A DNA stretch of 64,000 bases from Mytilus trossulus (Eukaryota): positions 2,356,001-2,420,000 of the forward strand of contig NC_086377.1 of NCBI RefSeq assembly GCF_036588685.1, read 5' to 3'. Position 1 is the first letter of the stretch, and each line of letters starts with the position of its first letter. Of this stretch, positions 26,990 to 64,000 are shown one piece after another. The notes under the pieces were generated by a model, which was not told the origin of the DNA, searched no databases, and saw only the letters and a list, made by a program, of their open reading frames with translations. The position numbers were made by a program, and so were the translations under genes.

Positions 26990-27077
26990 AGTTAATCTGA
27001 TTAATTAGAAATAGGATGATGTGGTATGGGTGCCAATGAGACAACTAAGTTCCTTTTAAATAAGTTATTCTGATTAA
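26990..27077. repeat. First ~1.2 monomers of the 73-bp satellite, separated from the rest of the array by the giant insertion
   Basis: Same unit and orientation as 62605-64000, ending at ...tctgaTTAA. Confidence 0.9.
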
Positions 27078-29078
27078 AACAAGGTATTAAATAAAACTGG
27101 AAATCAACATCAATTCTAGAAAACCTCCATTTCTTCTTACCTCTTAATTTCATGGTGTTAGTTCAATTATTTTTTAATTTGATGTAATTACCTTTTTTTT
27201 CTGTTTAGTTGGTTTTTTTCATATTCAACCTATTAATTATGTTTTACATACATATTGTGCATTATAACTTACCTTAGGAAATAAATTGCAAAACTTGATA
27301 GTATGGCTAAACCTTTTCATGATTTGTAAACATGAAAACTTAGAAACTAAGCTTACTCCATGCATGCATGGACGAAGGTAACTAACGTTAACTTAGTCCA
27401 TGCATGCATGGACTAACACAACAGACTTAGTCCATGCATGCATGCACTAAGGCAACTAACCCTAACTTAGTCCATGCTTGCATGGACTAACACAACAGAC
27501 TTAGTCCATGCATGCATGGACGAAGGCAACCAAGGCTAACTTAGTCCATGCTTGCATGGACGAAGGCAACTAAAATTAACTTCTTTAAAGTTTAAAAAAT
27601 TTATAAATGCAAAATATTTCAAAAAAATCAAATTTTTCAAAAATTAAAAAAAAAATTAAATATTTAAAAAAAAAATCTTTTAAAATTTAATTCTTATAAA
27701 AATAAATGAAAAAAACATGAAAAATTTACAAAATTATTTTTTTCCAAAATGCTGAAAAAAGTTTAAATCCCATTTTTTTTAAAAATTAAACAAAAAGAAG
27801 AAAAAAATGGTTAATTATCACCACCAGATATAGGTACCCTTGGATATAGGTATAAATACCACATGAGAATATTCACGTCTGCCAAAAGATTAGAATGTGT
27901 TCACATTTCATTTCAATGGTAAAAACTCTTCACTGAACAGATCAGTTGGAGGTGATTTGTTTAACATAACCTGGACAGTAGCTGCAATTAGTTCCTGAAA
28001 GTTCCTAATCATTTAGTAGTGGTAAGTGTTATTTTAGTTTGTTGGTATTATATCTGTAATAAACATGTGTTGTTGCACTATGATTTTTGCCTTTGTCTCA
28101 ATAGCAGCTAACTTTTTGTATATTTTGTACATGTACATGCATTTAGTCGTCAAATCATCAACCCAACAATGTAAGATCTGTAAATTTGCTTTCACAAATT
28201 TTTTGTTCTTCCCATGCCGGGATTCTAATCCATGCTACTGAGATATTGTGACACCAAATCTGTACAATTTTTAAACACCAGAGAAGAGCAGATGATTTAA
28301 ACACTTTTGTGTAATCCAGCATTATATAAGATGTTTTGTGTCTAATGTTATTATTGCAGTTTGAGCATTCAAAAACATGTTCATTATGTCCACTGGTAGT
28401 GTTTGGTTGCTGTCTGCCATATTAAATGGATTTCCTTTTTTTGTTATTTGCTTAAATTTGTCTATTAGCTTTCTCTTTTGAAATTAAATAAAAACAGTTC
28501 ACAAATTGAGTGTGCTGGGCTTATTTTAATTAACCTTCATCAGAAACATACTAACAAAAATTTGAAAGCAAAGGATGTAGATACCATTATCTTGGGACTT
28601 AATAAGCCCATGTATAACGATCTTTAAATTCAGGCTTTTGCTCATTGTTGAAGACTTCAGGTGATCTGTACTTGTTTACATCAGTGCCCTTCTATGCAGG
28701 GCTAGCAGTTGTCTCAATTGCAATCATTCAATGTATCCTTGCTTTTGTATCATTTAAAGACTTCAATTCTTTAATCATTTCAGTTAACACATTTTAATTT
28801 CAAAACATTCAACAGATATTTCCAAATAACAAATTTTGTAAACAACAGATATAATTGGTAACTGGTAATTATTTTACAGTCAATATGTTTTTATATTTAT
28901 CAAGAGGCATCATAATCATGTTCATTAAATTCTTTCCTTGTCTGACTGTTACTGATCTCAATTAAAACCAGTGAAAATTGCAAGTAGCTTTTGGTTTCTA
29001 GTAGTACTATTTTGATAAGATGTGTAATTTTTCGTCATTTCTTTTGATGTTCTGTCATATCCAGTCAGACTATTTCAC
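27078..29078 (+). repeat. Left inverted arm (~2.0 kb) of the giant element
   Basis: Begins aacaaggtattaaataaaactgg and ends ...cagtcagactatttcac. Colinear with the reverse complement of the right arm. Confidence 0.93.
27353..27565. repeat. Six copies of the 24-bp palindrome ttagtccatgcatgcatggactaa (variants), spaced alternately 40 and 34 bp
   Basis: Copies start at 27353, 27393, 27427, 27467, 27501 and 27541, and are mirrored at ~62117-62330. Confidence 0.92.
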
Positions 29079-31118
29079 ATGATGAACTTTACTCACAATT
29101 ATATTTCATCTGTAAATGCTAAATTATGCAACTTCTAATGCAGGGAGACATGAGGGTTACTAATTTTTTAAATGTATAACTAGTTTTTATCTAATGCAGT
29201 ATTTTTTTAATATCAAAATAAAAATAACTAAAACTGAGTATTTAATAGCAATATTTATTTGCAATTTTTTTAGTTATCTAACTTCAGTTTGCCTCAACTA
29301 AATGTTATGAAACTTATAAATCTAGGAACTTTGTAGAACATATTGTTGTTAATTGACCATGTTGATTTGCCATAATTTATCACATTCACACATATTCATT
29401 GCAAAAACATCTTCTTTTTCATAAGTGTCTACAGGAGCTTGTGTCTCTGTATCTTTCTTTAAAGAATCATCATGATAGCTTCTGTTCCCTTCACATTCGA
29501 GACATAAATGAGATTTTCAGGAAAATATCTACTCCTTATATCTTAATCTGAAAAAACAAAACAAAAAATATGCTTTCACATAGTTTGACATATTTTTACA
29601 AGATTGTACATACTGAATTCAGAAATGTCTTGCCTGCTTTATGGTCATGATTGAACTTTCTGTTGCATGTTTCAATCTGAAGAATATACCACAATTAGTT
29701 CCTAAAACATATACACATGACAAAATTTTTCTTCCAACATGATTTTTATTTATTTACTAATCAAGCTGAGAGTAGACAATGAAAAGTAGATAAACATATA
29801 TAGATTACCGTAGCTTCTCAACTTTAATTTGATATCAACAAAATGTATTGTGGTAATTCTCAAATATCTGTGCATGGTGGATCCAAGGGGAGGGTTCCGG
29901 TGGTTGGAACTCTCCTTTTTTTGAGACGATCAATGCACTTGAATGCAGACATATAGTTTCACCCCTCTTTTTTTTAACAGGAGGTTAATAAGCTGTAATT
30001 AGCAATGGATGTTAGTAGCCATTTAATTCTTTTAAATTAAAACTAGTCTGAAGTACTGAACCATGTTTGATTGAAATATTTGTAGATGCTATAATGACAC
30101 ACTTCTTCAAACATCAGTAACAGTTATAATCATACCTTTGCTGACTTCAGCATTTGGTTATGTCTTCAGTTTCTTTTCTCATCTGTCATAGTATCAATAT
30201 TATATATGTAGCATACCACCATCTTGATGCATTCTGTATTACAAATAGTTACTCAACAGTTTTATCGTAGCAATCTTTTGGTGTTTTTTTTATCAGGAAC
30301 TACATGTTCTATATTCTGGAAATCTTACAATGCATGGAAAAGCTGAAATTATAAATTAGGTAAATAAATTTTAATTAATATGAAACGACACAATCAGCTT
30401 TATTAATGATAAATGTGTACTAAGTTTCAAATTGATTGGACTTTAACTTCATCAAAAACTACCTTGACTAAAAAAACTTTAACCTGAAACTGAGGGAACA
30501 CTTTTAATTTCTATGTTCAGTGAACCATAAAAATGGGGTCAAAAGTCTTTAATTTTGTTTTAAAATAAGAAAGATCATGTCATAAGAAACATTTGTAGTA
30601 AGTTTCAAGTTGATTGGACTTCAGCTTCATCAAAAACTATCTTGACCAAAAACATTAACCTGAAGTGGGAAGAATGGATGGACAGACAAACAAAAAGACG
30701 AAAGGACGCACAGACTAGAAAACATAATGCTTCTCTACTATTGTAGGTAGAGCATAAAAATTCATAAAAGAACTAGCAAAAAAAGGCACCAACAAAAAGA
30801 AACAAATCTAAAGTAATTGTCCATTATTGATTAACCAGGAAACCCTTGTTTTTCCCCTTTTGTTGCTCCCAATTCATTAACAGATTGAGTCATAACTCCA
30901 ATATTCCAACCCTAACTATCCTTTGGAGTTTTGTGGTGTGGAAACTTCAGGCAATTCTATAAACTGTTCTACAAATTATTGTCTGGACAATAGAAAATTG
31001 ATTATTTGGGCCCCTTTTATATCCCTTTTTCCTACACCAAAGGGACCATAAATTAACCCCAAATCAATCCAAACCTTCCTTTTTGTGGTTTCAAACTTCA
31101 AAGATTTATATTTACTTA

Positions 31119-32058
31119 TAGTCCAGTCAAACTAAGATTTAACCTCAAACTAATTGCAACAGAAAATGTTTTAGTTCTAATCTATAGCATTATGCCCTTT
31201 ATATACACAGAAAAAAGTCCAATAAAATCTAACTTGAGGAAAACTCAAAATCAGCACTTTTAATTTCCTATGGAAATTAACATTGGAAGGGGAGATAACT
31301 CTTACAAAAATGAGTCTTTTTTGGACAGTTTTTGGTTGTTTTTCTTGAAATGTATGTACAGTATGATACTTTGATGGGGTTATAAGTTTGTATTTGACTG
31401 AAATATATAATCTTCTGCTCATGAAATGTACAAAACCAAAATGGAATGGGTAGTTTTATTTTTTTCATGCATTTTTCATTAAAGAATTTGCAAATTTGAA
31501 GCTTTGTAACCATTTTGAAAAAATAATGTGAAAATTTGGTAATGTTTATATCTGTATATTATATTATTTCAGCAACTTTCTTATCTAAAGAAACTTTAAA
31601 CCACAAAAAGGAGAATACATGCTTAATTATTTTTATTAAATTTGAGATTCTTTACCTTGACATGTTGAAAAAATCAATAAATGGTCAACTAATGAATAAC
31701 GAAATCTAGATTATAGCTTGATAAAATATATGAAAACACATTAAGAGTTGTTTATTATACTGTAAAGACCACTAAAAATCAAAAATCAATACATTCTGAT
31801 GGATAGAAGAGGTAAAGTTATAATTTTGTATCAATTTTTATTGATATTTCTGCCTTTTTTGCAAGAGTTATCTCCATTTACAATACAAATCTACATAGGA
31901 ATTTTAAATGGTGATTTTTTTAGTCTTCCTCAAGTTAGATTTTATGGGACTTTTTTCTGTGTATATTTGGGGTATAATGCTAAAGATTTAAACTTTTAAA
32001 TCTTCAGTTGCAATTACTTTTAGGTTAGGGTCAAATTTATGCTAGATAGACTGGACTA
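31119..32058. mobile_element. Non-autonomous DNA transposon with TAG...CTA termini, ~200-bp imperfect TIRs and a 3-bp TSD (tta); Academ-like
   Basis: tta|tagtccagtc ... gactggacta|tta. The inner TIR match is tacacagaaaaaagtcc...aacttgagga against tcctcaagtt...ggacttttttctgtgta. Confidence 0.75.
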
Positions 32059-32175
32059 TTATGCTAAAACTATTGGCATTTTTTTTAATTAAACTTAAGT
32101 TATTGGCAAATTTCCAATGGATTTTATTAATACTGAAGTTATATATTTTGGTAAATTTCAAAATCACATCTTTAA

Positions 32176-32450
32176 GGTGGTACCCAACACTTGAACTAAA
32201 ATTAATTTGGCTCGTTTAATTTTCTTAAAATTTTGACAAAGTATTTACTTTGACCCTTTGACAAAAATATAAAAATTAAAATTTTTTTGAACCAACCATT
32301 TTATCAGAAAAATTACACTGGTTACATATAGCAGTTTGACAAACACTCATTTTGATCATTGAAAATCTTAACATCCCTTTAACAACACAACGTAATTAAA
32401 ACGTTTAGCTGACTTTACAGAGTTATCTCCCTGTAGTGTTAGGTACCACC
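32176..32450. mobile_element. MITE with TTAA TSD and GG...CC ends (Kolobok-type)
   Basis: ttaa|ggtggtacccaacact ... agtgttaggtaccacc|ttaa. Confidence 0.85.
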
Positions 32451-32977
32451 TTAAAATTTGTGTGAAATAATTCAAATATAACTTTTGGATTACCTCCCTT
32501 ACACAGCTTTCAAATTGTCTTGACTATCCTTTAACCAGAAAAATAATTATTTTTCATCTTTTTTGCCCCTTATTCATAAATGGTTTTATCTATACCCTCA
32601 GCCAATCCTAACCATCCCATATAGTAGTATAGAGCATTGGGGTATAATTTCAGAAAGATCATACACTTTTTCACAAGTCATTAACTTAAAACTACAAAAA
32701 TGCTTGTGTTTGGCCCATCGTTCTTGACTGTTTGCCCCATAACCCTAAAAATAAATTCCAACCTTCTTCAAATCTTATAATATTTAACATTGTGGTACAA
32801 TTTCAGAGGAATTGAAATACTTATACACAACTTATTGTCCTGAAACTAGATAAATGCTTGTTTTGGTCCCCTTATCCTAAACCTTAGGGACCATAACCCC
32901 CAATATCAATCCCAAGCTTTCTTTTGTTGTTTTAAACATTGTGTTAAAATTCTATTCATTTCTATTAACATGATTAA

Positions 32978-35531
32978 AAAGTAAAATCACAAAAATACTG
33001 AACTCAGAGGAAAATCAATTTGGAAAGTCCATAATCACATGGCAAAATCAAAAAACAAAACGCATCAAAAACGAATGGACAAGAACTGTCATATTCCTGA
33101 CTTGGTACAGGCATTTTCAAATGTAGAAAATGGTGGATTAAACCTGGTTCTATAGCGCTAACCCTCTCACTTTAATAACAGTCTCATCAAATTCCGTTAC
33201 ATTTACATGATGCGTTAAATAAACAGTCACAATCAATAAAATAGTCAAAATATGGGAACATCAGTCATCATCGTATAACAATTTAACAGGACACAACAAC
33301 ATCTACTATCTACGAACACATGGATTGATTTGAGTGTCTGACGTCAGAAAAATTATATACGTCACATAAATTTGTCGTTCAATGTGCATACAATAGTTAT
33401 CAAAAGTACCTGGATTATAAACAATTTTAAATTTTACATAGGCAATGAGCGCAGACAGGGTTAAAAAATCAAAAGTATGTAATAATAAATTACAGAAATC
33501 AAACTAGTCCAAAAGTTATACATAGAATTTTAATATATGAGAATCCAAAACTTTTAAAAGGAACAATTTAACAGGACACAAAAACCTATCCACGAACACA
33601 TGGATCTACTTGAGTGTCCGACGTCAGAAAATTTATATACGTCACATAAATTTGTCGTTCAATGTGCATACAAACAATTTTAAAATTTACATAGGCAATG
33701 TACGCATACAGGGTTAAAAAATCAAAAGTATGTAAGAATAAATTACAGAAATAGACCGAGATTCAAACTAGTCCAAAAATTATACATAGAATATATGAGA
33801 ATCCAAAACTTTTTAAAGGGAACAATTTAACAGGACACAATAACATCTACTGTCTAAGAACACATGGATTGATTTGAGTGTCTGACGTTAGAAAAATTAT
33901 ATACGTCACATAAATTTGTTGTTCAATGTGCAAACAAACAATTTTAAAAAATTTTCATAGGCAATGTACGCATACAGAGTTAAAAAATCAAAAGTATGTA
34001 AGAATAAATTACAGAAATAGACCGAGATTCAAACTAGTTCAAAAGTTATACATAGAATTTATGAGAATCCAAAAATTGTCAATTCCACTACGCCATTGAT
34101 TGATTTTGACGTTTGTGGTTCAACGTATAAAGTAATTCATAATAGAAATATATCATAATGACATATTATAGACAAATATCATACTGACGGGATCTTTTAA
34201 AGTACAGAGTCACGTTATAAGCACAAAAGAAATACAAAGAGTCACATATACAAAACAAATCACCAAAAAATGAAAGCCAATACAAACACATTGACGAGAT
34301 GTATAAGTACCGAGCCACGTCAAACGGATATCACATAAAACCATTCAACAGTAAAAGTAATCTTAATAATAGAACAAAAACAAATAAAAGAACAATAAAA
34401 CATGTTGTTAAGATGATACACAACATCAGTACGCAGAATCTATACATCAAGACCATCGTGTATTATTTGAGAAGTTGATACGGAATATTTATCAACAAGG
34501 TCTTGGTACCTTCCGATGAACTTTTTTAGAAAAAGGACGAGACGTTCTTTGACATACCCCTGGTTCATCAACTTTCTACTCAGACACTGATGACGTTTTA
34601 CAAAGTCTGAGTAGGAGCTGCAAGCTCTTGAATATCGAATAAGTTGGGAAATATATATCCCATATGCAGGTGAAGTTGGTATATTGCTACTAAGGTGGGG
34701 GAAATTTATAATTTCGAAATTAAAATTGTCTTGTATGTCATAGATTCTGATACTGAGATGACTGTGTAAGTCAAATTCGAGATATAAGTCTAAAAATGAG
34801 GCGGAGGAAGCCGTGTCTGTTGTTTCTTTAATCTCGAGTTCTGGGGGATATATTAATGGAACCCAATCAGAAAAGTTCGGATTGTTTAAGGAAAGAACAT
34901 CATCAATATATCTGAAAGTGAAATTAAATAATCTGGCTTCTTTGATCCTCTTGTTTTTGACAAGTGTCTGGAGGAACTCCGATTCATATGAAAATAAGAA
35001 GAAGTCGGCAAGAAGAGGCGCACAGTTTGTTCCCATAGGAATGCCGACAACTTGTTGGAAAAGTCTACCTCCAAACTCAACAAATATGTTGTCGATAAGA
35101 AACTCCAGCATACTGACTACTTGTTCTTCTGTGTAGCATGATTTACCTTTTTGTTTGTCACTATTAACGAAATATGCTTTATGAAATCCCAAAGTAATAA
35201 ATTTATAGCGTATGCTAGCTACCATTTTTATGTTGAAAGGCATTGTGGATAATTTCTTTTAGGCGATTTTTCAATTTTACATCGGGAATGGTGGTATACA
35301 GGGTTGAAAAATCAAAAGTTTTGATGGAACTTATTTCGGAAAGAGACCGAGATTTGAAATTGTCTAGAAGTTCTTTAGCATTTTTAAGAATCCACATATG
35401 GTTAATACCACTACGCGAGTAAACAGTTTCACAGTATTTCTGAAGACCCTCTTTCACTGCGGACAGAATTTTAGTCAATCTAATAGACAATTCTTTAGTG
35501 GAACATGAAGATGAGCCAGCAATATATAACT
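32978..35531 (-). mobile_element. 5'-truncated Penelope-like retroelement with a 3' region containing three ~255-bp repeats
   Basis: RT ORF remnants at 34440-35530. Tandem ~255-bp repeats at ~33280-34075. The terminal module is shared with 2862-2970 and 1-270. Confidence 0.8.
34440..35530 (-). pseudogene. Penelope-like reverse transcriptase (frameshifted near 35230, 5'-truncated)
   Basis: Motifs TFDFSTLYTTIP, QVVGIPMGTNCAPLLAD, FRYIDDVL, SFLDL and SNIPTSPAYGIYISQLIRYSRACS. The ORF stops with no C-terminal GIY-YIG domain. Confidence 0.88.
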
Positions 35532-35663
35532 TATACTAAAGTTATTATCTGGAAACCATCCGTCTTTGAACGATGCTCAGCTGACCACAAAGACGATGTG
35601 ATACCAATATAATTATATGATTGCAAAAATTTTATGGTTGTATAAAAAGGTATTCTAGACTTT

Positions 35664-36469
35664 AAACTAGAGGCTCTAAAGAACCTGTGTCGCTCACCTT
35701 GGTCTACATGTATGTGAATATTAAACAAAGGAAGCAGATGGATTCATGACAAAATTGTGTTTTGGTGATGGTGATGTGTTTGTACATCTTACTTTACTGA
35801 ACATTCTTGCTGCTTAAAATTATCTCTATATATAATAAACTTGACCCAGTAGTTTTAGTGGAAAATGTTAGTAAAAATTTACAAATTTTATGAAAATTGT
35901 TAAAAATTGACTATAAAGGACAATAACTCCATAGGGGATTAATTGACCTTGTTGACCATTTCGGTCATGTTGACTTATTTGTAAATCTTTTTTTGCTGAA
36001 CATTATTGCTGTTTACAGTTTATCTCTATCTATAATAATATTAAAGATAAAAACCAAAAACAGCAAAATTTCCTTAAAATTACTAATTCAGGGGCAGCAA
36101 CCCAACAATGGGTTGTCTGATTCATCTGAAAATTTCAGGTCAGATAGATCTTCACCTGTTAAACACTTATACCAATTATACCCTTGTCAGATATATGCTC
36201 TAAATGCTTTGGTTTTTGAGTTATAAGCCAAAAACTGTATTTTACCCCTATGTTCTATTTTTAGCCATGGCGGCCATCTTGGCTGGTTGGCCGGGTCATC
36301 TGACATATTTTTTAAACAAAATACATGTACCACAATGATGATTGTGGCCAAGTTTGGTTTAATTTGTTTTCAAAGTTTCAGAGTTCTAGAAGATTTTTGT
36401 AAAGGTAACAACACCAGATGCAAAGTGATGGGAAAAGCTCACTAGGCCCTTTGGGCTAGGTGAGCTAAA
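35664..36469. mobile_element. Helentron-associated (HINE/DINE-like) non-autonomous repeat
   Basis: Terminal hairpin agctcactaggcccttgggctaggtgagct followed by an A-run. Left end aactagaggctctaaagaacctgtgtcgctcacc. Confidence 0.5.
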
Positions 36470-52543: not shown

Positions 52544-53712
52544 GGGCATACCGTCCAGTGTTGGATCCTGTATTTACAAGTTCGTGAAAATTTGCATATA
52601 GGCTATTTTTTACCTGATTAAATCAAATATGTAATAAAAAATATACCTTCATGTGCTACTTTTTGAGAAAAATGAGGTCGAAATTTTGTATATTTGCTCA
52701 AAATTCAGATATGTCACAATGTGGCCGTATTTTCTTTTTTCGAAAAAAAGAAATAATTTTTATAAAAGATAAACTCAAATTGTTTTTTGTTAAAGTCATA
52801 TGAAACGAGTGAGTGGTGAAAAATAATGTTTGTCCAATTCTTGAACCAATGGATGTATACATTCATAAACTTAGTCCTATGTGCACGATTTTATCATTAT
52901 TTTCGCAAATATATCATATAATCGCCAATTTTTTTCTCTCTCTGTTATGATTGAACAAATATGGCTGCTCATTTAATGCCGTGATTTGAAGCAGAGTTTA
53001 ACCGATTGTCACCTTATAGTAAACAAATCACAAAAAGCATTGGTATTGAGCATGTGTTTAACATGTATAATCAGATATTTGTTTATTTCAATGACAGATC
53101 CATGCGTATTGTGGTCACCGGATTTTTACGAGGAGGGTTACGCTTGGGTCACTTATAATGCATACGGAAAATATGTCGGCAAATTGCTTGCTGGCAGCAA
53201 GCAATTAAAAATAAGTACTCTTCTTCTAAATGTGGACAAATTAAAAAATTTAAAAGTATATGTACATAAGTTGTTTAAAGAAAACTAACCATTTAGTTAT
53301 AAAAAACATATGCAGATTTTTTTTATTTGAGGTTTCTTATGACTTTAAATAATCGGTAATTTCTGTATTTTATAAGTATCCTAAAAAATTATGCATTTTT
53401 TATTCCGAAATAACTCGTATTTATCAAATGTTCATGAATTGAGGAAAAATATGTCATTTTTGGCTTTATGTTTATCAAAATTTAAAAAAATCCTAAATTT
53501 GGGTCACATAATCTCCCTGCAAATTGAAAGTCAAACAAATTGCTGTTTTGAAAAATGGGGTTCCATGAACTCGTTTTCAAATAAATTCAGTTTGAATGAT
53601 AAAAATCAGTCGAAAAATGCATTTTTCCCTGGTATGTTAAAGTTTGATGTCGCAAAAATAACATTTTGCATTAGCAACGTCATTACCTCCTCTGTAACTG
53701 TATCGTATGCCC
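52544..53712. mobile_element. Non-autonomous TIR element with TTAA TSD (Kolobok-type)
   Basis: ttaa|gggcataccgtccagt ... actgtatcgtatgccc|ttaa. Confidence 0.8.
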
Positions 53713-55556
53713 TTAAAAGCTAACCTAGACCTATAAATGAATGATTATAGCCATCACTTGATGTCATCTAAACAAATAACATATAGATGGAGAGAAATTT
53801 TAGTTTAAGTCGCAAAAATGAACAACAAGAAAAGATCATCAAATAAGTATCATGAATGGTTGAAATTGTCAGTCAACTCCTAATTATTTAATAAATTAGC
53901 CACAGAGTTTTTTGTAAGGTCTAGTTTTAATTAGGATTTTATTGTAGATAAAGGAGATAAATTTCCTCTGTTGACAAAAAAATGGTTGAGGAGTCGGAAA
54001 GTTTGACTGAAGATTAAGGATATCAAATGAAGGTAAACATAAACTTAAAGTAATGTTTATATTTGTATTAATACATGTACCTCGAGTATGCATCAAAGAT
54101 GTATTGGGTAAGATGGTAATAACTGTATGTGAAACAATAAAATTTGTTTAAAGTGGGCAGTACATGTATATTAAAACATACCATCAACATTAGCACAACT
54201 AAAAATGCAATCATAAAAGCATCTGCAAAGTTTCATAGAAATCTGTGAAAGTATGACACAGTATCCATGGTATCAGTTATTTGATGTCCATGTCATTCAA
54301 GGTGGATATTGTGTCATTGGCAATAGACAAATTTCCTATTTACATGTACCCACTTTAATCGGAACAAATTTGAGGGAAGTTAACTGTTTAATGCATATGC
54401 CATTATGTTTTCTATACATGACTAAATCATCAGAAAACAGTAAACCTTCCCCCAAAATTGCACCATTTATATTTTTGAATTTACTTCTTTCGGGTGTTTG
54501 TAGTGACAGAGTACTAGGATGTCTTACCACAGAGACGGTATTAAAACCTGTTGAAAAAAATAGAATCCTAGTCAAAAGTTGATAATGTGAAAATAGACTG
54601 TTATACCACATCATCTTATTGTCGAGCCTGCAACTTTTGTTGCAGAAAGCTCGACATATATATAATGTTCTGGGGGCCAGCAGAGGAGTTAGCTGAATTT
54701 TTAAAAGCTTTATATTTTAGAAGGATGAAGACCTGGATGCTTCATACTTTGAATATATACCAAGATGCCTCAGGTTACCAAGTTTCTCTCAGTCACATGT
54801 CCAATGTCCTTGACCTAATTTTCATGGTTGAGTGTCTACTTGAAAAAAAAGTTAAGATTTTTATACGACTGCAAAAATTTAAAATTTTGGTTGTATATTG
54901 GTATGAGGTTGGCGTCATTGTCGTTGTCATCCGAAGACATTTGGTTTTCACACTATAACTAGTATAAGTAAATAGAAACCTATGAAATTTGAACACAAGG
55001 TTAAAGACTAGAAAAGGAAGTTTCAAATTGATTTTGGGAGTTTTGGTCCCAACAGATTAGGAGTAAGGGGCCAAAAAGGGCCCAAATAAGCATTTTTCTT
55101 GGTTTTTGCACAATAACTTTAATAGTATAAGTGAATAGAAATCTATGAAATTTTAACACAAAGTTTATGACCACAAAAGGAGGGTTGTTATTGATTTTGG
55201 GAGTTTTGGTCCCAAACAGTTAAGGAATTAGGGTCCAAAGGGTCCAAAATAAAACTTTGTTTGAGTTGATCAAAAAATGAATTATTTGGGTTCTTGTATA
55301 TATGTCAAATCTAACCGTATATTTAGGGTGCAATCAACAGTTTTTTTCTATGACGTTATATTTTGAGGGACCATCTATAATTGACCCTTAGTGGTGTTAA
55401 TGTTAATGAAGATACTTGTTTAAAACTAGATATCATTAGAATTAGAATTTTCTTTAGTTTATAATGAAATAAAAATAAATTGTACTTTTAATAGTACCAA
55501 AAAGTTTTATCCAGAGAAAATGGAAAAAACATTGCCTAATCTATGCATAAAAAACA

Positions 55557-56297
55557 CTAGAACACACCCGTGATATCGCGGGTCCGTGACTGAATTAATG
55601 TATATTACTATGCGCAAGCCTTATTTTAGTATTAGTATTGTCATCTGTTAAAGTCATGCCGATTATAAGATACACAGTTTTCTCTGCTTTCAAATCTTTC
55701 TGTTTGAACCCGTCGAACTGGAACTTATCAATTATAGGTAATATTAATTATTTGGAAAACAAAAGGTCCTGGAATGGAGTATTTTTTAATCAACAGCATT
55801 GTCCTATATTAGTTATAAATAAAATTGAATTCTTTGATTCGCTGTTTTACGTCATGCCCGCTAACAAATTGAAAACTGTACCTATACGCCTTATTTTTAG
55901 TCCAGATTTTTAGTATTCGTATTCTTATCTTAGAAAGACTTACTGATTAAATGATTAAAATTAGTAGTGTCAACCCTGTGATTATGACCCGTGTATATAG
56001 CATATTAATCCTAAATACACCGTTTGGTGGTGCGCCTGTCAGGTGCGGAACGTTCAGATAAGGTAATAGGTAACAGGTGAATATACTATTGGTATCGGTA
56101 TCGGTATCGGACTCGACCCGGAACTTCTTAATTATTGGCAATATTAATTACGTGGAAAACAAAAGGGCCTGGAGTGGTGTAATTTTTAATCTACAGCTTT
56201 GTACTATATTACTTATATATAAAGTTAAATTCTTTGATTCGTCGTTTTTACGTGATGACGGCTGACAAATTGGACCTCGTAATTTTAGTATTATAGA
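55557..56297 (-). mobile_element. Non-autonomous Helitron
   Basis: The minus strand starts a|TCtataatactaaa and ends with the hairpin cccgcgatatcacggg followed by tgtgttCTAG|t, i.e. insertion between A and T with no TSD. Confidence 0.85.
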
Positions 56298-57875
56298 TGA
56301 AATCAGGCCATGTGCACACCCATGCAGACATGATACATGCACATTTTTCATATTCAAAACAGTATGAATTTCATAGGTTTTTACCTGGTCTTTTAAAAAT
56401 TTATGCTTCAGGCTACGTTCGTCTGCTTCGAAAAGAGATACAGTGGGTGCAAATAAGTTTTGCACTTTTCACTGACAAAAAAACAGGATGTTTACAGTTT
56501 GTCTCCCCTTAAAACATGTGTATTTAATCTAATTTTTAAAAATTATTTTAATCATTCAACCTGTTTTAATTGAAGCTAATTAACTTAATTTTACAATTAA
56601 ATATAAAAAACATGATACTTTTTTACCAATTATGTTGATAAAAAAGGACTTCCCTCCAAGTCTATTTTTAGTTGGGGGAATTACCCCTAGTTTTTTATAT
56701 GAAACTGTTTATAGCACCCTTAGATTTTTAATTTTTGGTCCCGTTTTCAAATTGGTCTACATTAAGGTACAAATGGTCCAAAATTAAACTTTGTTTGATT
56801 TTAACAAAAGTTGAATTCTTGGACTTCTTTGATGCTGAATCTAAACATGTACTTAGATTTTTGATTATGGACTGTTGGTCCAAATCGGGGTTCAAATTAA
56901 ACTTTGTTTGATTTCAACAAAAATGGGGTTCTTTAATATGCTGAATCTAACCGTGTATTTAGATTTTTAATATTTGGGCCCAGTTATCAAATTGATCCAC
57001 ATTGACATGCTTGAGGTCTAAAGGGTCTAAAATTGCACATTATTTGATTTCATCAAAAATTGAATTCTTGGGGTTCTATGATCATGATGATATGCTGAAT
57101 CTAACCATGTATTTATATTTTGGATATTTGACCATAATAGGTAAATGTCCAATTTAAAATTTATAAGTTTTTTTCTTGCCTTGACGGGGTAAAAAAATGA
57201 GACATAGGTATGGTGTTCCCCGCAGCGGCAGCATCAACTATGTATTAGTTTGTGATTAGGTCAATTTATGGTGAACCACTAGTGGTAGGTGAATGATATT
57301 TGGTATGCAGTTGTATAAGCATTGGCATATCTCATTTTCATGGTCTATAGACTTTAATAATTTTGCTAAGTTAATATGTATTAGTTTGTGATGAAGGTCA
57401 GTTCAAGGGGAACCATTAGTGGTAGGCCAATGTTAATTGGTGTTCAGTTTTATAAATATTAGCACATCTCATTTCCATGGAGAATATTTGGCCCTGCCCC
57501 CTCAGTCATGGTCTATTGACTTTGGAACTTTTGCTTAGTTTACATGTATTAGTTTGTGATAATATCAGTTTAAGATGAACTGCTAATGTTAAGTCAATGA
57601 TATTTGGTATGCAAATTTATTGTCATTTGAAAGTGTTGTTTTCATGGAGATTATATAGCTCCACCCCTGATCATGGTTCATTGACTTTGAAACTTTTACA
57701 TAGTTTAAAAGTTAATGTTTGTGTTTAGGTTCGTTTAAAGGGAACTACTTATTATGAGTCAATGGTAATTGGTATGCAGTTGTATTATATTTATCATTGG
57801 CACATCTCATTCCATGGCGATTGTTTAGCGCATGCACCATGTACCTTCAGTCATTGTTCATAGCCCTGAGACTTT

Positions 57876-58080
57876 GAATATTTGCATAACTTACATGTTA
57901 AAATATTGCTATTTAATTTCAACATTGCATTATCAAAATTACATGAATATTTGCATAACTTACATGTTAAAATATTGCTATTTAATTTCAACATTGCATA
58001 ATCAAAATTACATGAATATTTGCATAATTTACATGTTCAAATATTGCTATTTAATTTCAACATTGCATTATCAAAATTAC
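57876..58080. repeat. ~68-bp tandem repeat, 3 copies
   Basis: gaatatttgcataacttacatgttaaaatattgctatttaatttcaacattgcattatcaaaattac repeated three times. Confidence 0.9.
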
Positions 58081-60155
58081 AAAAAGGCGATACATATCTC
58101 TGTGATAACAGTTTATTATAAAGAGTAAGTTCTTAGACCACATTCATTCTGTGTCAGAAACCTATCTTGTGTCAACTATTTAATCACAATCCAAATTCAG
58201 AGCTGTATCAAGCTTAAATGTTGTGTCCATACTTGCCCCAACTGTTTAGGGTTCGACCTACGTGGTCCTATAAAGGCGTGCCCTGCGGAGCATCTGGTTT
58301 GTAAAGTGAAATTCTCTCTTATTATAAGTAATAGGATAACTATATTTGGTATGTGAGTACCTTGCAAGGTCCTCATGGCTGTCATACAGTTTTCACTTGA
58401 CCTCGCCCTCCTTTCATGGATCAGTGAACAAGGTTAAGTTTTGGTGGTCAAGTCCATATCTCAGATACTAAAAGCAATATGTCTAGTATATTTGGTGTAT
58501 GGAGGACTGTAAGGTGTACATGTCCAACTGGCAGGTGTCATCTGACCTTGACCTCATTTCCATGGTTCAGTGATTATAGTTGAGTTTTTGTGGGTTTTTT
58601 TTCTGTTTTTCATATACTATTTGCAATAGGTCTAATATATTTGGTGTATGGAAATAATAACAGAATAATTGTTAGGTGTACATTTCTAGCTGGTATGTGT
58701 CATCTGCCCTTGACCTCATTTTCATGGTCAGTGGTCAAAGTTAAGTTTTTGAGTTTTTGTCTTTTTATCTAATACTATATGCAAAAAGTCTACTGCTATA
58801 ATAACTATATTAGGTGTATGGAGATATATTAGTTGTATGGAAGAATTATTAGTTGTATAGATGTGTGCCTTGTATGGTTCATCTCACCTTGCCTGTCCTT
58901 GGCCTCATTTTCATGGTTTAGTGGTAAATTTTTAGTTTTTTTGGTTAATGTTAAGGTTATGTTTTAATTGTAATAAAGCTTTATTTTAAGGACTACATTA
59001 TATTAAACATTAGAAAGAAGCTACAGATTAATGTTAACTGCAAAAATACTAAAATCCTTTATTAATTAGATCATGTAGATACAGGAAATGAAAATATTTT
59101 GAAATTTTTTATCATAAAAATGGTTATGCTTATATATTCAAGTTTCACTAAATTCCAAGAAGGGTTTCCACAAATAAAAATGACTGATTTTCAAAATGAT
59201 CATCATGTAAAAATGAAGAGATGTGCTAAGATTGCCCATGAAAACTATCTTTATGAACAATGACAGTTCAGTGGTTTGCTTTCAGCCTTTAGCAAAAATA
59301 ATTACCATATATATTGTAATAAGCTATTAAGAAAAGCCCCCCATTGTTAAATGTTAAACAATTAAAAAGTAAAAAACAGCGTCCTGATTTTTATAAGTTT
59401 GAAGAATAAAATTGAGTCATATTATGGTATGATGTTGTTGTTAGCGATGTATGTTGACACATATGGTTTGATAATTATATAGTTAAAGCGAATGGATATC
59501 CATGAAATTTTACACAAGGTTTAATACCAAAAAGGAAGGTTGGGTTGATTTTTGGGGTGATGGTACCATTGTTACAGTTTAGAAATTAGGGGCAAAAAAG
59601 AAGCATTTTTGTAGTTTCCAGACATTAACTTGTGTGCCAGTGTACTAATCTCTCTGAAATTGTTCTTCAAGGTTCCATATCACAAAGGGTAGACTGGAAT
59701 TGTTTAAAGGGGTAATTGCCTCAAACGTTCAGGAAATAGGGGGTCAAAAACAAGCATTTTTCTAATTTCCAGACAATATTTTGTGTTTAAGTGTATGGAT
59801 TTCTTTAAAATTGTACTGCAAAGTACCATACCACAAAGGAAAAGGCTGGGATTAAGTTTTGGGTTAATTACTGAAAGGGGGTTGAAAAAAATTGGGGGAG
59901 GGTTTTTTTTTTTCTCCTCATAATTTTGATAAAAATCCAAATACAGACAGTCTATCAAGCTTGAATATTGTGTCCAAACATGCACCAACTGGTCAAATAA
60001 CAAGGCTGTGCTGCACATAATTTTCTTCATCATATTAATCTGACATGTTAAAATTTTGTACATTATGAAGTTACTAAATTGTTGATTTTGTGTATTTCAG
60101 ATTATTATTGAAAAAAGAGCACTTTGAAGTACTAGGAGAATTTGAAAACATCGTG

Positions 60156-62604
60156 GTGAAATAGTCTGACTGATTATGACAGAACATCAAAAGAAATGAC
60201 GAAAAATTACACATCTTATCAAAATAGTACTACTAGAAACTAAAAGCTACTTGCAGCAATTTTCACTGGTTTTGAGATCAGTAACAGTCTGACAAGGAAA
60301 GAATTTAATGAACATGATTATGATGCCTCTTGATAAATATAAAAACATATTGACTGTAAAATAATTACCAGTTACCAATTATATCTGTTGTTTACAAAAT
60401 TTGTTATTTGGAAATATCTGTTAAATGTTTTGAAATTAAAATGTGTTAACTTAAATGATTTAAGAATTGAAGTCTTTAAATGATACAAAAGCAAGGATAC
60501 ATGGAATGATTGCAATTGAGACAACTACTAGCCCTGCATAATAGGGCACTGATGTAAACAAGTACAGGTTACCTGAAGTCTTCAACAATAAGCAAAAGCC
60601 TTAATTTAAAGATTTGCATGGGCTTATTAAGTCCCAAGATAATGGTATCTACATCATTTGCTGTCAAATTTTTGTTTGTATGTTTCTGATGAAGGTTAAT
60701 TAAAATAAGCCCAGCACACCTAATTTGTGAACTGTTTTCTTTTAATTTCAAAAGAGAAAGCTAATAGACAAATTTAAGCAAAAAACAAAAAAAAAGAAAT
60801 CCATTTAATATGGCAGACAGCAACCAAACACAACCAGTGGACATAATGAACATTTTTTTGAGTGCTCAAACTGCACTATAACATTAGACACAAAAACATC
60901 TTATATAATGCTGGATTACACAAAAGTGTTTAAATTATCTGCTCTTCTCTGGTGTTTAAAAATTGTACAGATTTGGTGTCACAATATCTCTGACAGTAAC
61001 ATGGGTTAGAATTCCTGCATGGGAAGAACAAAAAAATTGCGAAAGCAAACTTACAGATCTTACATTTTTGGGTTGATGATTTGACAACTTGCATGTACAT
61101 GTACAATATATACAAAAGTTAGCTGCTATTGAGACAAAGGCAAAAATCATAGTGCAACAAATAAAATTGAGAAAGGAAATGGTGAATATGTCAAAGCGAC
61201 AACCACCCGACCATAGAGCAAACAACAGCCGAAGGCAACCAATGGGTCTTCAATGTAGCGAGAATTACCGCACCCGTAGGTGTCCTTCAGCTGGCCCCTA
61301 AAATATGCATAATATTACAGTGATAATGGATGTCATACTAAACTCCGAATTATACACAAGAAACTAAAAAGGCCAGAGGCTCCTGACTTGGGACAGGTGC
61401 AAAATTGCGGCGGGGTTAAACATGTTTATGAGATCTCAATCCTCCCCCTATACCTCTAGCCAATGTAGAAAAGTAAAAGAATAACAATACCCACATTAAA
61501 ATTCAGTTCAAGAGAAGTCCGAGTCCCATGTCAAAAGATGTAACAAAAGAAAATAAATAAAATGACAATAATACATAAATAACAACAGACTACTAGCAGT
61601 TAACTGACATGCCAGCTCCAGACCTCAATTAAACTGATTAAACATGTTTATTACAGATATAATAACAATAAACTAAAATAACACTTACCACTTCTAAATG
61701 ATTAGGAACTTTCAGGAACTAATTGCAGCTACTGTCCAGGTTATGTTAAACAAATTTTCAGCTCCAACTGATCTGTTCAGTGAAGAGTTTTTATCATTTA
61801 AATAAAATGTGAACACATTCTAATCTTTTGGCAGACGTGAATATTCTCATGTGGCATTTATACCTATATGCAAGGGTACCTATATCTGGTGGTGATGATA
61901 CACAGTGATAATTAACCATTTTTTTCAGCATTTTGGAGAAAAAATAATTTTGTAAATTTTTCATGTTTTTTTCATTTATTTTATAAGAATTAAATTTTCA
62001 AAGAATTTTTTTTAAATATTTTTTTTTTTTTTTTTAATTTTTTGAAAAATTATTTTTTTTTGAAATATTTTGCATTTATAAATTTTTTAAACTTTAAAGA
62101 AGTTAATTTTAATTGCCTTCGTCCATGCAAGCATGAACTAAGTAAGCCTTGGTTGCCTTCGTCCATGCATGCATGGACTAAGTCTGTTGTGTTAGTCCAT
62201 GCAAGCATGGACTAAGTTAGGGTTAGTTGCGTTAGTGCATGCATGCATGGACTAAGTCTGTTGTGTTAGTCCATGCATGCATGGACTAAGTTAACGTTAG
62301 TTACCTTCGTCCATGCATGCATGGAGTAAGCTTAGTTTCTAAGTTTTCATGTTTACAAATCATGAAAAGGTTTAGCCATACTATCAAGTTTTGCAATTTA
62401 TTTCCTAAGGTAAGTTATAATGCACAATATGTATGTAAAACATAATTAATAGGTTGAATATGAAAAAAAACAACTAAACAGAAAAAAAAGGTAATTACAT
62501 CAAATTAAAAAATAATTGAACTAACACCATGAAATTAAGAGGTAAGAAGAAATGGAGGTTTTCTAGAATTGATGTTGATTTCCAGTTTTATTTAATACCT
62601 TGTT
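60156..62604 (-). repeat. Right inverted arm of the giant element (2.45 kb including a private ~480-bp insertion)
   Basis: Reverse complement of 27078-29078, ending ccagttttatttaataccttgtt|ttaa. Confidence 0.93.
61161..61639. mobile_element. SINE-like insertion present only in the right arm
   Basis: The left arm is contiguous (aaacatgtgttgttgcactatg at ~28061-28082). The right arm has ataaaattgagaaaggaaatgg...ctcaattaaactgatt at the equivalent point. Confidence 0.8.
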
Positions 62605-64000
62605 TTAATTAGAAATAAGATGATGTGATATGGGTGCCAATGAGACAACTAAGTTCCTTTTAAATAAGTTAATCTGATTAATAAGAAACAAGATGATGTG
62701 GTATGGGTGCCAATGAGACAACTAAGTTCTTTTTAAATAAGTCAATCTGATTAATTAGAAATAAGATGATGTGGTATGAGTGCCAATGAGACAACTAAGT
62801 TCCTTTTAAATAAGTTAATCTGATTAATTAGAAATAAGATGATGTGGTATGGGTGCCAATGAGACAACTAAGTTCCTTTTAAATAAGTTAATCTGATTAA
62901 TTAGAAATAGGATGATGTGGTATGGGTGCCAATGAGACAACTAAGTTCCTTTTAAATAAGTTAATCTGATTAATTAGAAATAAGATGATGTGGTATGAGT
63001 GCCAACGAGACAAATATGTTCCTTTTAAATAAGTTAATCTAATTAATTAGAAATAAGATGATGTGGTATGGGTGCCAATGAGACAACTAAGTTCCTTTTA
63101 AATAAGTCAATCTGAATAATTAGAAATAAGATGATGTGGTATGGGTGCCAATAAGACAACTAAGTTCCTTTTAAATAAGTCAATCTGATTAATTAGAAAT
63201 AGGATGATGTGGTATGGGTGCCAATGAGACAACTAAGTTCCTTTTAAATAAGTTAATCTGATTAATTAGAAATAAGATGATGTGGTATGGGTGCCAATGA
63301 GACAACTAAGCTTCTTTTTAAATAAGTTAATCTGATTAATAAGAAATAAGATGATGTGGTATGGGTGCCAATGAGACAACTAAGTTCTTTTTAAATAAGT
63401 CAATCTGATTAATTAGAAATAAGATGATGTGGTATGAGTGCCAACGAGACAACTATGTTCCTTTTAAATAAGTTAATCTAATTAATTAGAAATAAGATGA
63501 TGTGGTATGGGTGCCAATGAGACAACTAAGTTCCTTTTAAATACGTTAATCTGATTAATTAGAAATAAGATGATGTGGTATGGATGCCAATGAGACAACT
63601 AAGTTCCTTTTAAATAAGTAAATCTTATTAATTAGCAATAAGATGATGTGGTATGGGTGTCAATGAGACAACTAAGTTTCTTTTGAATAAGTAAATCTTA
63701 TTAATTAGCAATAAGATGATGTGGTATGGGTGCCAATGAGACAACTAAGTTCCTTTTAAATAAGTTAATCTGATTAATTAGAAAAAAGATGATGTGGTGT
63801 GGGTGCCAATGAGACAACTAAGTTCCTTTTAAATACGTTAATCTGATTCATTAGAAATAGGATGATGTGGTATGGGTGCCAACGAGACAACTAAGTTCCT
63901 TTTAAATAAGTCAATCTGATTAATTAGAAATAAGATGATGTGGTATGGGTGCCACTGAGACAAATAAGTTCCTTTTAAATAATTTAATCTGATTAATAAG
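62605..64000. repeat. 73-bp satellite, ~19 copies, running off the window end
   Basis: The unit is ataagatgatgtggtatgggtgccaatgagacaactaagttccttttaaataagttaatctgattaattagaa, with period 73 (62761 to 62834). Confidence 0.96.

What the first reader, a model, noticed from the sequence alone, without database searches (positions are those of the whole stretch)
27074..62608. Giant 35.5-kb long-TIR element with a TTAA TSD, inserted in register into a satellite
Seen in the sequence: ~2-kb arms in inverted orientation ~31 kb apart, ending exactly at TTAA|aacaagg...ccttgtt|TTAA. The flanks are the two halves of one 73-bp satellite monomer (tctgaTTAA and TTAAttagaaat) in the same orientation, so the empty site can be read from neighbouring monomers and only TTAA is duplicated. 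This argues that the whole block arrived in one integration event. Established: TTAA TSDs are made by piggyBac (CC...GG ends) and Kolobok (RR...YY ends), and AA...TT fits Kolobok. Kilobase arms around cargo recall Drosophila FB/FB-NOF foldback elements. Inference: this is a very large cargo-carrying non-autonomous DNA transposon. I see no cognate transposase and do not recognise the family.
Basis: partly seen in the sequence, partly recalled or inferred. Interest (0 to 1): 0.9.

Follow-up and report, generated by a model that had tools for sequence, protein, structure and literature searches.

The report
Giant gene-less long-TIR transposon family
The 35.5-kb block is one of about 25 copies of a mobile DNA element with 2-kb inverted ends that has repeatedly moved some 30 kb of apparently gene-less DNA, making 4-base target duplications that are not TTAA-specific, so it is a real and unusually large transposon but not the Kolobok/piggyBac type first suggested.

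Summary
Window 27078-62604 is bounded by ~2-kb inverted arms and flanked by TTAA. It sits in register in a 73-bp satellite monomer.

- **Family:** the terminal 28-mer occurs 104 times in the 1.3-Gb genome (reversed control 0). About 26 giant copies (25-51 kb, ~24 independent insertions) plus 0.3-5.9-kb deletion derivatives all end exactly at AACAAGG.
- **TSD:** it is 4 bp, but TTAA occurs only at this locus. Others are TATA, TGCA, TAGA, TTTA and so on, with a palindromic preference (TAC|TNNA|GTA). Kolobok and piggyBac membership therefore fails on their defining feature.
- **Backbone:** five full copies share a collinear 24-28-kb backbone, ~97-98% identical in well-aligned blocks. Size differences are private nested insertions.
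- **Coding content:** I found no transposase, conserved exon, tRNA or Rfam RNA. The backbone holds LINE remnants and an old interspersed repeat.
- **Arms:** each has six 18-bp palindromes 278-484 nt from the tip, and the short derivatives keep them.

Best reading: a giant non-autonomous long-TIR DNA transposon, moved in trans by an unidentified enzyme that makes a 4-bp stagger. The superfamily is unresolved. Read-level tests and further genome fetches were unavailable. The scan's notes hold no earlier record of this family on other DNA.

The parts
26990..27077 (.). One monomer plus 11 nt of the 73-bp satellite on the left of the insertion, ending in the left TSD copy
   Evidence: same monomer as the array at 62605-63997
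27074..27077 (.). Left copy of the 4-bp target site duplication (TTAA)
27078..27105 (+). Terminal 28-mer (AACAAGG...), the family's exact outer end
   Evidence: 104 matches with at most 2 mismatches genome-wide, reversed control 0; the boundary lies at this base in every copy
27078..29084 (+). Left inverted arm (long TIR, homology to the right arm ends ~1.98 kb from the tip)
27355..27562 (.). Six copies of the 18-bp palindrome GTCCATGCATGCATGGAC, alternately spaced 40 and 34 bp (three 74-bp units). Probable transposase-binding sites
   Evidence: 23 strand-matches in the window, 0 expected, all in the two arms; kept in the 0.7-0.9-kb derivatives
29085..60155 (.). Interior: family backbone (about 20 kb here) plus three insertions private to this copy. 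No gene detected
32978..35526 (-). Nested retroelement fragment private to this copy (RT-like ORFs 34440-35490)
   Evidence: absent at the contiguous site in copies C15, C2 and C35
41463..44261 (.). LINE remnants that are part of the shared backbone (RT fragments on +, a LINE-tail-like frame on -)
   Evidence: present in all five copies, still giving 140-237-aa open frames in some
44547..50029 (-). Nested fragment of an unrelated transposable element with its own 5-bp TSD (ACTGT). It carries the 342-aa ORF at 49025-50053
   Evidence: intact empty site seen in copy C60. Relatives of the ORF lie outside the giant copies
54614..54893 (.). Old copy of a high-copy ~280-bp interspersed repeat embedded in the backbone. 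It is the source of the spurious ZSWIM-like frame
   Evidence: 9486 first-look candidates, 55-70% matches full of stops all over the genome
55557..56296 (.). ~740-bp high-copy interspersed repeat nested in this copy only
60156..62604 (-). Right inverted arm (carries ~0.45 kb more than the left arm between the matching blocks)
62121..62327 (.). Mirror array of six palindromes in the right arm
62605..62608 (.). Right copy of the TSD (TTAA)
62605..63997 (.). 73-bp satellite array, the insertion target. It supplies the empty-site sequence

Best explanation
This is one copy of a family of giant, gene-less, non-autonomous DNA transposons with ~2-kb terminal inverted repeats. Shown: an exact conserved outer end (AACAAGG...CCTTGTT); about 26 giant copies of 25-51 kb, ~24 of them independent; internally deleted derivatives of 0.3-5.9 kb; a 4-bp target duplication at nearly every insertion; a palindromic target preference of roughly W-T-n-T-A-C | T-N-N-A | G-T-A-n-A-W; a shared collinear 24-28-kb backbone; and no detectable gene. 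Inferred: the element is moved in trans by a DDE-type transposase or integrase encoded elsewhere (or now lost). That enzyme would bind the terminal sequence and the six subterminal 18-bp palindromes in each arm, pair the two ends, and insert with a 4-bp stagger whose repair gives the TSD. The backbone is ordinary repeat-laden DNA, either accumulated in or captured by the master copy before the burst. After the burst each copy diverged by ~1-1.5% and picked up its own nested insertions.
For: Ends and TSD. Family size: 40 full-length terminal hits at 97-100%; 104 termini, control 0, in inverted pairs 25-51 kb apart plus short pairs. TSDs: 14 of 19 giant pairs have a perfect 4-bp duplication in unrelated flanks, one has 5 bp, three have one mismatch, and chance per pair is ~0.7%. 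Target profile from 54 ends: T at -4 in 40/54, A at -1 in 37/54, C at -5 in 26/54 with G 0, A at -6 in 35/54, T at -9 in 41/54. Shared backbone. No coding content of its own: Pfam on all 206 frames of 45 aa or more finds only nested RT. The long ORFs (140 aa or more) in four other full copies are retroelement-type. No frame of 45 aa or more is both intact in all five copies and low in non-synonymous change. Open-frame counts match Markov shuffles except in a CT-rich/LINE stretch. There is no tRNA or Rfam RNA. The backbone's own LINE remnant still gives 140-237-aa frames, so a real gene of the same age would be visible. Cis-sites. Deletion derivatives keep the ends and palindromes. The arms group by side, not by copy, so one master with defined left and right arms gave rise to all copies.
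Against: No transposase has been linked to these ends, so trans-mobilisation and the DDE chemistry are inferred from TIR-plus-TSD anatomy alone. Pfam has no models for the Sola, Academ, Kolobok, Zator or KDZ cores (PMC5751038), so a decayed or intron-rich gene of those types could escape my screens. Another window of this genome is said to hold a 23-exon transposase gene (note s1-820542, unchecked). Only 5 of ~26 giant copies were read in full, and a larger copy could still hold the gene. No read-level or population evidence was obtainable, so there is no proof of excision, polymorphism or current activity. Transposition efficiency is expected to fall as the distance between TIRs grows (PMC6431247), so ~24 jumps of a 30-kb passive element is itself surprising.
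Confidence: 0.7

Rival explanations
1. It is a non-autonomous member of the Kolobok superfamily, from a lineage whose transposase has relaxed the TTAA requirement.
For: The TSD is 4 bp, the termini are AA...TT (RR...YY), and TTAA occurs at this locus. Kolobok is common in bivalves (PMC9587614, PMC10294476), and the scan's unchecked notes report Kolobok-type elements in this genome.
Against: Kolobok is defined by TTAA-specific TSDs (PMC9587614). Here only 1 of 19 giant pairs and 2 of 54 end flanks are TTAA. No Kolobok transposase is associated with the element.
Confidence: 0.12
2. The mobilising enzyme is an integrase-type transposase of the Ginger2/TDD kind, so the family is a giant non-autonomous Ginger-like element.
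For: Ginger2 makes 4- or 5-bp TSDs (PMC10045372) and prefers AT-rich TATA (PMC3845634). Here TATA is the commonest TSD (8 of 54), one copy has a 5-bp TSD and one an irregular 6-7-bp TSD. Ginger-type elements are reported in this genome by unchecked notes.
Against: Ginger ends begin TGT...ACA (PMC3845634, PMC10045372), whereas these begin AACAAGG. No rve-type frame was found in the element.
Confidence: 0.12
3. The element is autonomous: the backbone hides an intron-rich or wholly novel transposase gene that ORF and Pfam screens miss.
For: Several transposase superfamilies have no Pfam model (PMC5751038). Intron-rich transposase genes are reported in this genome (unchecked note s1-820542). An autonomous element would explain efficient movement of 30 kb.
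Against: No frame of 45 aa or more is intact in all five copies with a synonymous excess. Open-frame counts equal Markov shuffles. The best-conserved 'frame' is an interspersed repeat. A same-age LINE remnant in the backbone is still readable as 140-237-aa frames, while nothing comparable of non-retroelement type exists.
Confidence: 0.1
4. It is a composite or macro-transposon: two copies of a ~2-kb element in inverted orientation that once mobilised the genomic DNA lying between them.
For: The architecture recalls Tn10-like composites and the FB-flanked transposing segments of Drosophila cited in PMC6431247. The interior looks like ordinary repeat-laden DNA.
Against: The arms have no inner terminus: only two terminal 28-mers occur in this copy, both at the outer ends. 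No free-standing ~2-kb element with two such ends was seen among the 104 termini. The short derivatives are left-end plus right-end deletion products. The interior was never found outside giant copies among the hits scored.
Confidence: 0.05
5. It is an assembly artefact or a local inverted duplication, not a mobile element.
For: The locus lies in satellite-rich DNA.
Against: The same exact ends occur at ~24 independent loci on 12 or more contigs, each with its own 4-bp TSD and unrelated flanks. The insertion here is in register in a satellite monomer.
Confidence: 0.01

Closest known systems
Kolobok superfamily DNA transposons
   Same: 4-bp TSD; RR...YY (here AA...TT) termini; abundant in bivalves
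   Different: Kolobok TSDs are TTAA-specific (PMC9587614), whereas here TTAA is 1 of 19 giant pairs. No Kolobok transposase was found. The size (30 kb or more) and 2-kb TIRs are far beyond described Kolobok elements.
Ginger2/TDD integrase-type cut-and-paste transposons
   Same: TSD of 4 (occasionally 5) bp with an AT-rich, TATA-favouring target
   Different: Ginger termini are TGT...ACA and they encode an rve-type integrase. Neither is present here.
Sola superfamily (Sola1-3)
   Same: 4-bp TSD with a group-specific target preference. Sola occurs in bivalves (PMC10294476).
   Different: The Sola1 hallmark target is AWWT (PMC3845634) and reported Sola2 TSDs are AWWT/ATAT-like (PMC3627910). Here the pattern is TNNA. 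The DDD transposase could not be tested, because there is no Pfam model.
Drosophila Foldback (FB, FB-NOF) and FB-flanked transposing segments
   Same: Kilobase-scale inverted arms around unrelated internal DNA, and the ability to move very large segments (PMC6431247)
   Different: From my own knowledge, not tested here: FB arms are built of tandem repeats and give ~9-bp TSDs. These arms are unique sequence with one short palindrome array, the TSD is 4 bp, and the same 30-kb unit was copied ~24 times rather than moved as a one-off.
Pack-MULEs and other non-autonomous cargo-bearing TIR elements
   Same: Non-autonomous; TIRs enclose DNA unrelated to a transposase; moved in trans (PMC6431247)
   Different: Pack-MULEs are typically a few kb, carry gene fragments and make 8-10-bp TSDs (sizes and TSDs from my own knowledge). 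Here there is a ~26-kb gene-less interior and a 4-bp TSD.
Giant eukaryotic DNA elements (Polinton/Maverick, Teratorn)
   Same: Size class of tens of kb, terminal inverted repeats, TSDs
   Different: Those are autonomous and virus-like with many long ORFs (Polinton 6-bp TSD; Teratorn piggyBac TTAA; PMC6431247, PMC10045372). This element has no ORFs of its own.

Membership tests
Kolobok | TTAA-specific 4-bp TSD | tested here: not met
   the TSD is 4 bp long, but TTAA is found only at the window copy (2 of 54 end flanks). Others are TATA, TGCA, TAGA, TGTA, TTTA, GATA, TCAG and so on.
Kolobok | 5'-RR...YY-3' termini | tested here: met
   AACAAGG...CCTTGTT in every copy.
Kolobok | Kolobok-clade DDE transposase (C/DxxH signature) in autonomous members | not testable with these tools
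   No Pfam model exists for the Kolobok core (PMC5751038), and no autonomous partner was found. The only CxxH-bearing ORF in the window lies in a separate nested element with its own 5-bp TSD.
piggyBac | TTAA TSD | tested here: not met
piggyBac | 5'-CC...GG-3' termini | tested here: not met
   the termini are AA...TT.
piggyBac | DDE_Tnp_1_7 transposase | tested here: not met
   no such Pfam hit in any frame of 45 aa or more in the element.
Ginger2/TDD | 4-5-bp AT-rich (TATA-like) TSD | tested here: met
   mostly 4 bp, one 5 bp, TATA the commonest.
Ginger2/TDD | TGT...ACA termini | tested here: not met
Ginger2/TDD | rve-type integrase gene | tested here: not met
   no rve hit in the element. 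A partner elsewhere was not searched for.
Sola | 4-bp TSD | tested here: met
Sola | Group-specific target (Sola1 AWWT; Sola2 AT-rich AWWT/ATAT) | tested here: not met
   first base T in 40/54 and last base A in 37/54, i.e. TNNA, the opposite polarity to AWWT.
Sola | DDD transposase of the Sola type | not testable with these tools
   No Pfam model (PMC5751038) and no partner identified.
Chapaev (CMC) | Invariable 5'-CAC...GTG-3' termini, 3-4-bp TSD | tested here: not met
   The termini are AAC...GTT. The definition is from PMC4079192.
Polinton/Maverick | 6-bp TSD; protein-primed PolB, integrase and capsid genes | tested here: not met
   4-bp TSD and no such ORFs.
Foldback (FB) | Arms composed of tandem repeats; ~9-bp TSD (from my own knowledge) | tested here: not met
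   the only tandem structure in the arms is the 74-bp x 2.8 palindrome array; 4-bp TSD.
Non-autonomous TIR DNA transposon (generic class II) | Conserved TIR ends, TSD at independent insertions, no own transposase, deletion derivatives sharing the ends | tested here: met

The most novel reading that the evidence does not exclude
[quoted passage not shown] Its transposase would make 4-bp TNNA duplications at a ~14-bp palindromic target, use arrays of 18-bp palindromes in kilobase TIRs, and be able to move 30-50 kb of passive DNA again and again. That would make it a natural very-large-cargo transposition system in an animal.
Probability: 0.25. Interest if true: 0.8.

Novelty: new variant of a known kind. 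Interest (0 to 1): 0.6.

Why it matters
DNA transposition is expected to become inefficient as the ends move apart (PMC6431247). Known non-autonomous elements are mostly small, and known giant eukaryotic elements are autonomous and virus-like or gene-rich. Here a ~30-kb unit without any detectable gene has inserted about two dozen times with clean 4-bp TSDs. This shows that some animal transposase can handle very long substrates routinely. Each jump relocates or duplicates tens of kb, which is a ready source of structural and presence/absence variation. Finding the enzyme could both define a new or atypical transposon lineage and offer a large-cargo integration tool. The family also shows that ORF-based TE catalogues, such as the bivalve survey PMC10294476, cannot see such elements.

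Tried and rejected
1. The 342-aa ORF (49025-50053) as cognate transposase: rejected. It lies in a window-private insertion with its own 5-bp TSD, ACTGT. Its relatives sit outside the giant copies in 900-1250-aa frames with no Pfam hit. The atlas look-up gave only unnamed mollusc and sponge clusters.
2. The ZSWIM1/3-helical hit (E 0.03) in frame 54572-54955 as a decayed Mutator gene: rejected. It is isolated, and the frame is a high-copy interspersed repeat.
3. The other weak Pfam hits (PHD_pln, Peptidase_M9_N, IBR, DUF6965) are at the chance level for 206 frames.
4. The 5.9-kb copy (L054) as autonomous element: rejected. It is an older internal-deletion derivative with no ORF.
5. The larger copies as carriers of the gene: in the 44.5-kb copy the extra DNA is LINE and LTR-retroelement sequence.
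6. An end-versus-interior identity gradient between copies: not real once indels are excluded. The gradient between the two arms is real.
7. A progenitor locus for the interior: none among the hits scored.
8. tRNA and Rfam scans: empty.
A mollusc host is only a lead from the transposon content.
10. The scan's notes gave leads (Ginger-, Sola- and Kolobok-like elements in this genome) but nothing with these termini.

Full report
**Observation**

The element runs from window 27078 to 62604. It begins aacaaggtatt and ends aataccttgtt, and TTAA stands immediately outside each end, at 27074-27077 and 62605-62608. The repeat finder returns six collinear inverted blocks at 95-97% complementarity that link 27068-29078 with 60156-62614.

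The right flank is a 73-bp satellite (62605-63997, 19.1 copies). The left flank holds one monomer plus 11 nt. Intact monomers read ctgaTTAAttag, so exactly TTAA is duplicated and the insertion is in register.

**It is a family**

The first 400 nt of the element gave 40 full-length matches at 97-100% identity in the window's own genome (1.3 Gb, 541 contigs; the window is C5:2356001-2420000). Only 40 candidates were scored.

The terminal 28-mer, with up to 2 mismatches, occurs 104 times (50 forward, 54 reverse), against 0 for the reversed control. The matches fall into three groups:
- 24 inverted pairs 25-51 kb apart on C2, C3, C5, C6, C7, C9, C10, C12, C14, C15, C35, C43, C60 and C65;
- short inverted pairs of 342-912 bp and one of 5.9 kb;
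- about 30 unpaired ends.

Two further giant copies (C13:13.40 Mb and C6:10.00 Mb) are shown by interior matches. The two C14 copies at 73.8 and 73.95 Mb share identical flank sequence at the one end read in both. The two C65 copies are of near-equal size and were not compared at their flanks. I take both pairs to be duplications. That leaves about 24 independent giant insertions. A 40-kb 'pair' on C3 at 55.2 Mb is really a 342-bp derivative duplicated with its flank, and no giant interior is found there.

**Target site duplication**

The boundary lies at the same base, before aacaagg, in every copy. The 19 giant pairs whose two flanks I could read break down as follows:

| TSD at the pair | Pairs |
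|---|---|
| Perfect 4-bp direct repeat flush with the ends, in unrelated flanks | 14 |
| Perfect 5-bp repeat (CTGGT) | 1 |
| One mismatch in four, one of them a CpG transition (TACG/TACA) | 3 |
| Irregular (CCGGTA against CCGGGTA) | 1 |

A 4-bp match is expected by chance in about 0.7% of pairs at this base composition.

The duplicated sequence varies: TATA, TGCA, TAGA, TTTA, GATA, TAAT, TACA, TTAT, TGTA, TCAG, TGTT. TTAA occurs only at the window copy.

Over 54 distinct end flanks the target shows an extended, symmetric preference:

| Position | Preferred base | Count |
|---|---|---|
| -4 | T | 40/54 |
| -1 | A | 37/54 |
| -5 | C (G never) | 26/54 |
| -6 | A | 35/54 |
| -7 | T | 31/54 |
| -9 | T | 41/54 |
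| -10 | A or T | 53/54 |

Because both ends are read outward, this amounts to a palindromic site of about W-T-n-T-A-C | T-N-N-A | G-T-A-n-A-W. A palindromic target with a fixed stagger is what a two-fold symmetric transposase or integrase complex produces. That link is an inference from established knowledge.

**What lies between the arms**

I assembled four other copies in full (30.3, 30.9, 32.1 and 44.5 kb). All are collinear with the window copy. In a five-way alignment, 18.3 kb is present in all five copies, 24.2 kb in at least four and 27.9 kb in at least three. Substitution-only identity is about 97-98% in well-aligned blocks, with no difference between ends and interior. Length differences come from 1.8-15 kb of private DNA per copy.

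In the window copy the private pieces are:
- 32978-35526, a retroelement fragment with RT-like frames;
- 44547-50029, a fragment of another transposable element flanked by its own 5-bp TSD, ACTGT, with the intact empty site visible in copy C60;
- 55557-56296, a high-copy ~740-bp repeat.

In the 44.5-kb copy the long ORFs in the extra DNA are LINE and LTR-retroelement ORFs.

**No gene of its own**

- **Pfam:** all 74 stop-to-stop frames of 65 aa or more, and all 132 frames of 45-64 aa, gave only reverse-transcriptase hits from nested elements, plus a handful of hits at the chance level.
- **The 342-aa ORF** the eye is drawn to lies inside the nested insertion. It belongs to a family with 900-1250-aa frames elsewhere that is not associated with these termini.
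- **The best-conserved interior frame** (54572-54955, weak ZSWIM-like hit) is an old copy of an interspersed repeat with thousands of stop-riddled relatives.
- **Conservation:** no frame of 45 aa or more is both intact in all five copies and low in non-synonymous change.
- **Open-frame counts** equal those of second-order Markov shuffles, apart from an excess of frames of 80 aa or more on the minus strand. By inspection that excess lies in a CT-rich stretch and LINE tails.
- **RNA genes:** no tRNA or Rfam family is present.

There is an internal control. The LINE remnant that is part of the shared backbone (41463-44261) still gives 140-237-aa frames in several copies, so a gene of the same age should have been visible.

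Three caveats apply:
- Substitutions between copies are mostly post-insertion and neutral, so the synonymous/non-synonymous test is weak.
- Sola, Academ, Kolobok, Zator and KDZ cores have no Pfam model (PMC5751038).
- Only five of ~26 giant copies were read in full.

**Arms and cis-sites**

Each arm carries six copies of the 18-bp palindrome GTCCATGCATGCATGGAC, 278-484 nt from the tip, alternately spaced 40 and 34 bp. There are none elsewhere in the window, and none are expected by chance.

The 703-912-bp derivatives keep the ~270-nt tip and part of the array. The 342-bp derivative has lost the array.

In a tree of the ten arms from five copies, all left arms group together against all right arms. 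There is no fixed left/right difference within the first 831 nt from the tip, and there are 16 between 832 and 1615 nt. Arm homology ends near 1.98 kb.

So one master copy with already slightly different arms founded the family. The arms are not homogenised within copies, and the outer ~0.8 kb was a perfect inverted repeat in that master. This agrees with the two other first-reader notes on this window (s1-818582 and s1-818604).

**Mechanism**

Shown: conserved exact ends, a fixed 4-bp stagger with a palindromic target, about 24 independent insertions of the same ~30-kb unit, deletion derivatives that keep only the ends, and no gene.

Inferred: the family is non-autonomous and is moved in trans by a DDE-type transposase or integrase that recognises the tip and the palindrome array, synapses the ends and integrates with a 4-bp stagger.

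Whether movement is cut-and-paste or copy-in cannot be told from these data. Pairwise divergence of 2-3% argues for a past burst rather than activity today.

**Comparison with known families**

| Family | Defining features | Result here |
|---|---|---|
| Kolobok | TTAA-specific TSD plus RR...YY termini (PMC9587614) | Termini fit; TTAA specificity tested and not met |
| piggyBac | TTAA TSD, CC...GG termini | Fails both |
| Chapaev | CAC...GTG termini (PMC4079192) | Not met |
| Sola | 4-bp TSD with group-specific targets; AWWT is the Sola1 hallmark, AT-rich AWWT/ATAT reported for Sola2 (PMC3845634, PMC3627910) | Length fits; TNNA target does not |
| Ginger2 | 4- or 5-bp, TATA-favouring TSD (PMC10045372, PMC3845634); TGT...ACA ends; integrase | TSD behaviour is the closest match; ends and integrase absent |
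| Polinton, Teratorn | Giant but autonomous and ORF-rich (PMC6431247) | No ORFs of its own |
| FB, Pack-MULE | Long arms or TIRs around unrelated DNA | Architectural analogues only |

I therefore file it only under the generic class of non-autonomous TIR DNA transposons, with the superfamily unresolved.

**Novelty and limits**

The review PMC6431247 states that transposition efficiency falls as the distance between TIRs grows. The bivalve TE survey PMC10294476 catalogues only ORF-bearing elements, and its longest families average ~5.5 kb. I found no description of a gene-less ~30-kb TIR element amplified some two dozen times. This is a library-limited statement, and Repbase could not be consulted.

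So junction support in reads, empty alleles, expression, the remaining copies and the organism's name are all untested. A mollusc host is only a lead.

**Verdict**

It is wrong on the TTAA/Kolobok-piggyBac inference. This is a real and unusual giant non-autonomous transposon family whose enzyme remains to be found.

Noticed in passing
window 44547-50029; relatives at L052 (C1:101555601-101559488), L053 and L049: The nested fragment belongs to a family with 900-1250-aa open frames that has no Pfam hit. [quoted passage not shown] Its nearest atlas clusters are unnamed mollusc and sponge proteins. The insertion here has a 5-bp TSD (ACTGT) and one intact end (CAGTAGG...). It may be a Pfam-blind transposase family.
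   Followed up: partly
G000 C11:16674670-16703126: Four short (~0.7-0.85 kb) derivatives of the family lie 9-10 kb apart in the same orientation. This suggests a tandemly duplicated ~9.5-kb unit that contains one derivative.
   Followed up: no
G000 C6:67454160-67485744 and 67497467-67529073: Two giant copies lie only 12 kb apart with opposite interior orientation. Each has a one-mismatch TSD. This could reflect local hopping or a preferred region. A simple inversion between them does not explain the TSDs.
   Followed up: partly
G000 C14:73804648-73829577 and 73948268-73973182; C65:2043033-2075070 and 2481298-2513333: These are pairs of giant copies of near-equal size. The C14 pair shares identical flank sequence at the end read in both; the C65 flanks were not compared. 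The copies appear to have been carried along in larger segmental duplications of 144 kb and 438 kb spacing, or the pairs may be haplotype duplicates in the assembly.
   Followed up: no
G000 C3:55197989-55198330 and C3:55237996: A 342-bp derivative with a TATA TSD has its right end and flank repeated 40 kb away. That mimics a giant pair, although no giant interior is present there.
   Followed up: partly
window 54614-54893 and 55557-56296: Two different high-copy interspersed repeats. One, of ~280 bp, has about 9,500 first-look candidates and predates the family's burst. The other, of ~740 bp, inserted afterwards in this copy only. Together they bracket the burst in relative time.
   Followed up: partly
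window 8943-17392, 18371-20435, 1057-1632: The 27 kb upstream of the element is dominated by other satellites: a 63-bp unit x 134, a 79-bp unit x 26 and a 70-bp unit x 8. The element therefore sits in a satellite-rich block 2.4 Mb from one end of an 88-Mb contig.
   Followed up: no
window 39998-41336: A purine-skewed stretch (GC skew +0.23) gives four low-complexity open frames of 90-109 aa on the minus strand. They are a composition artefact rather than genes.
   Followed up: partly
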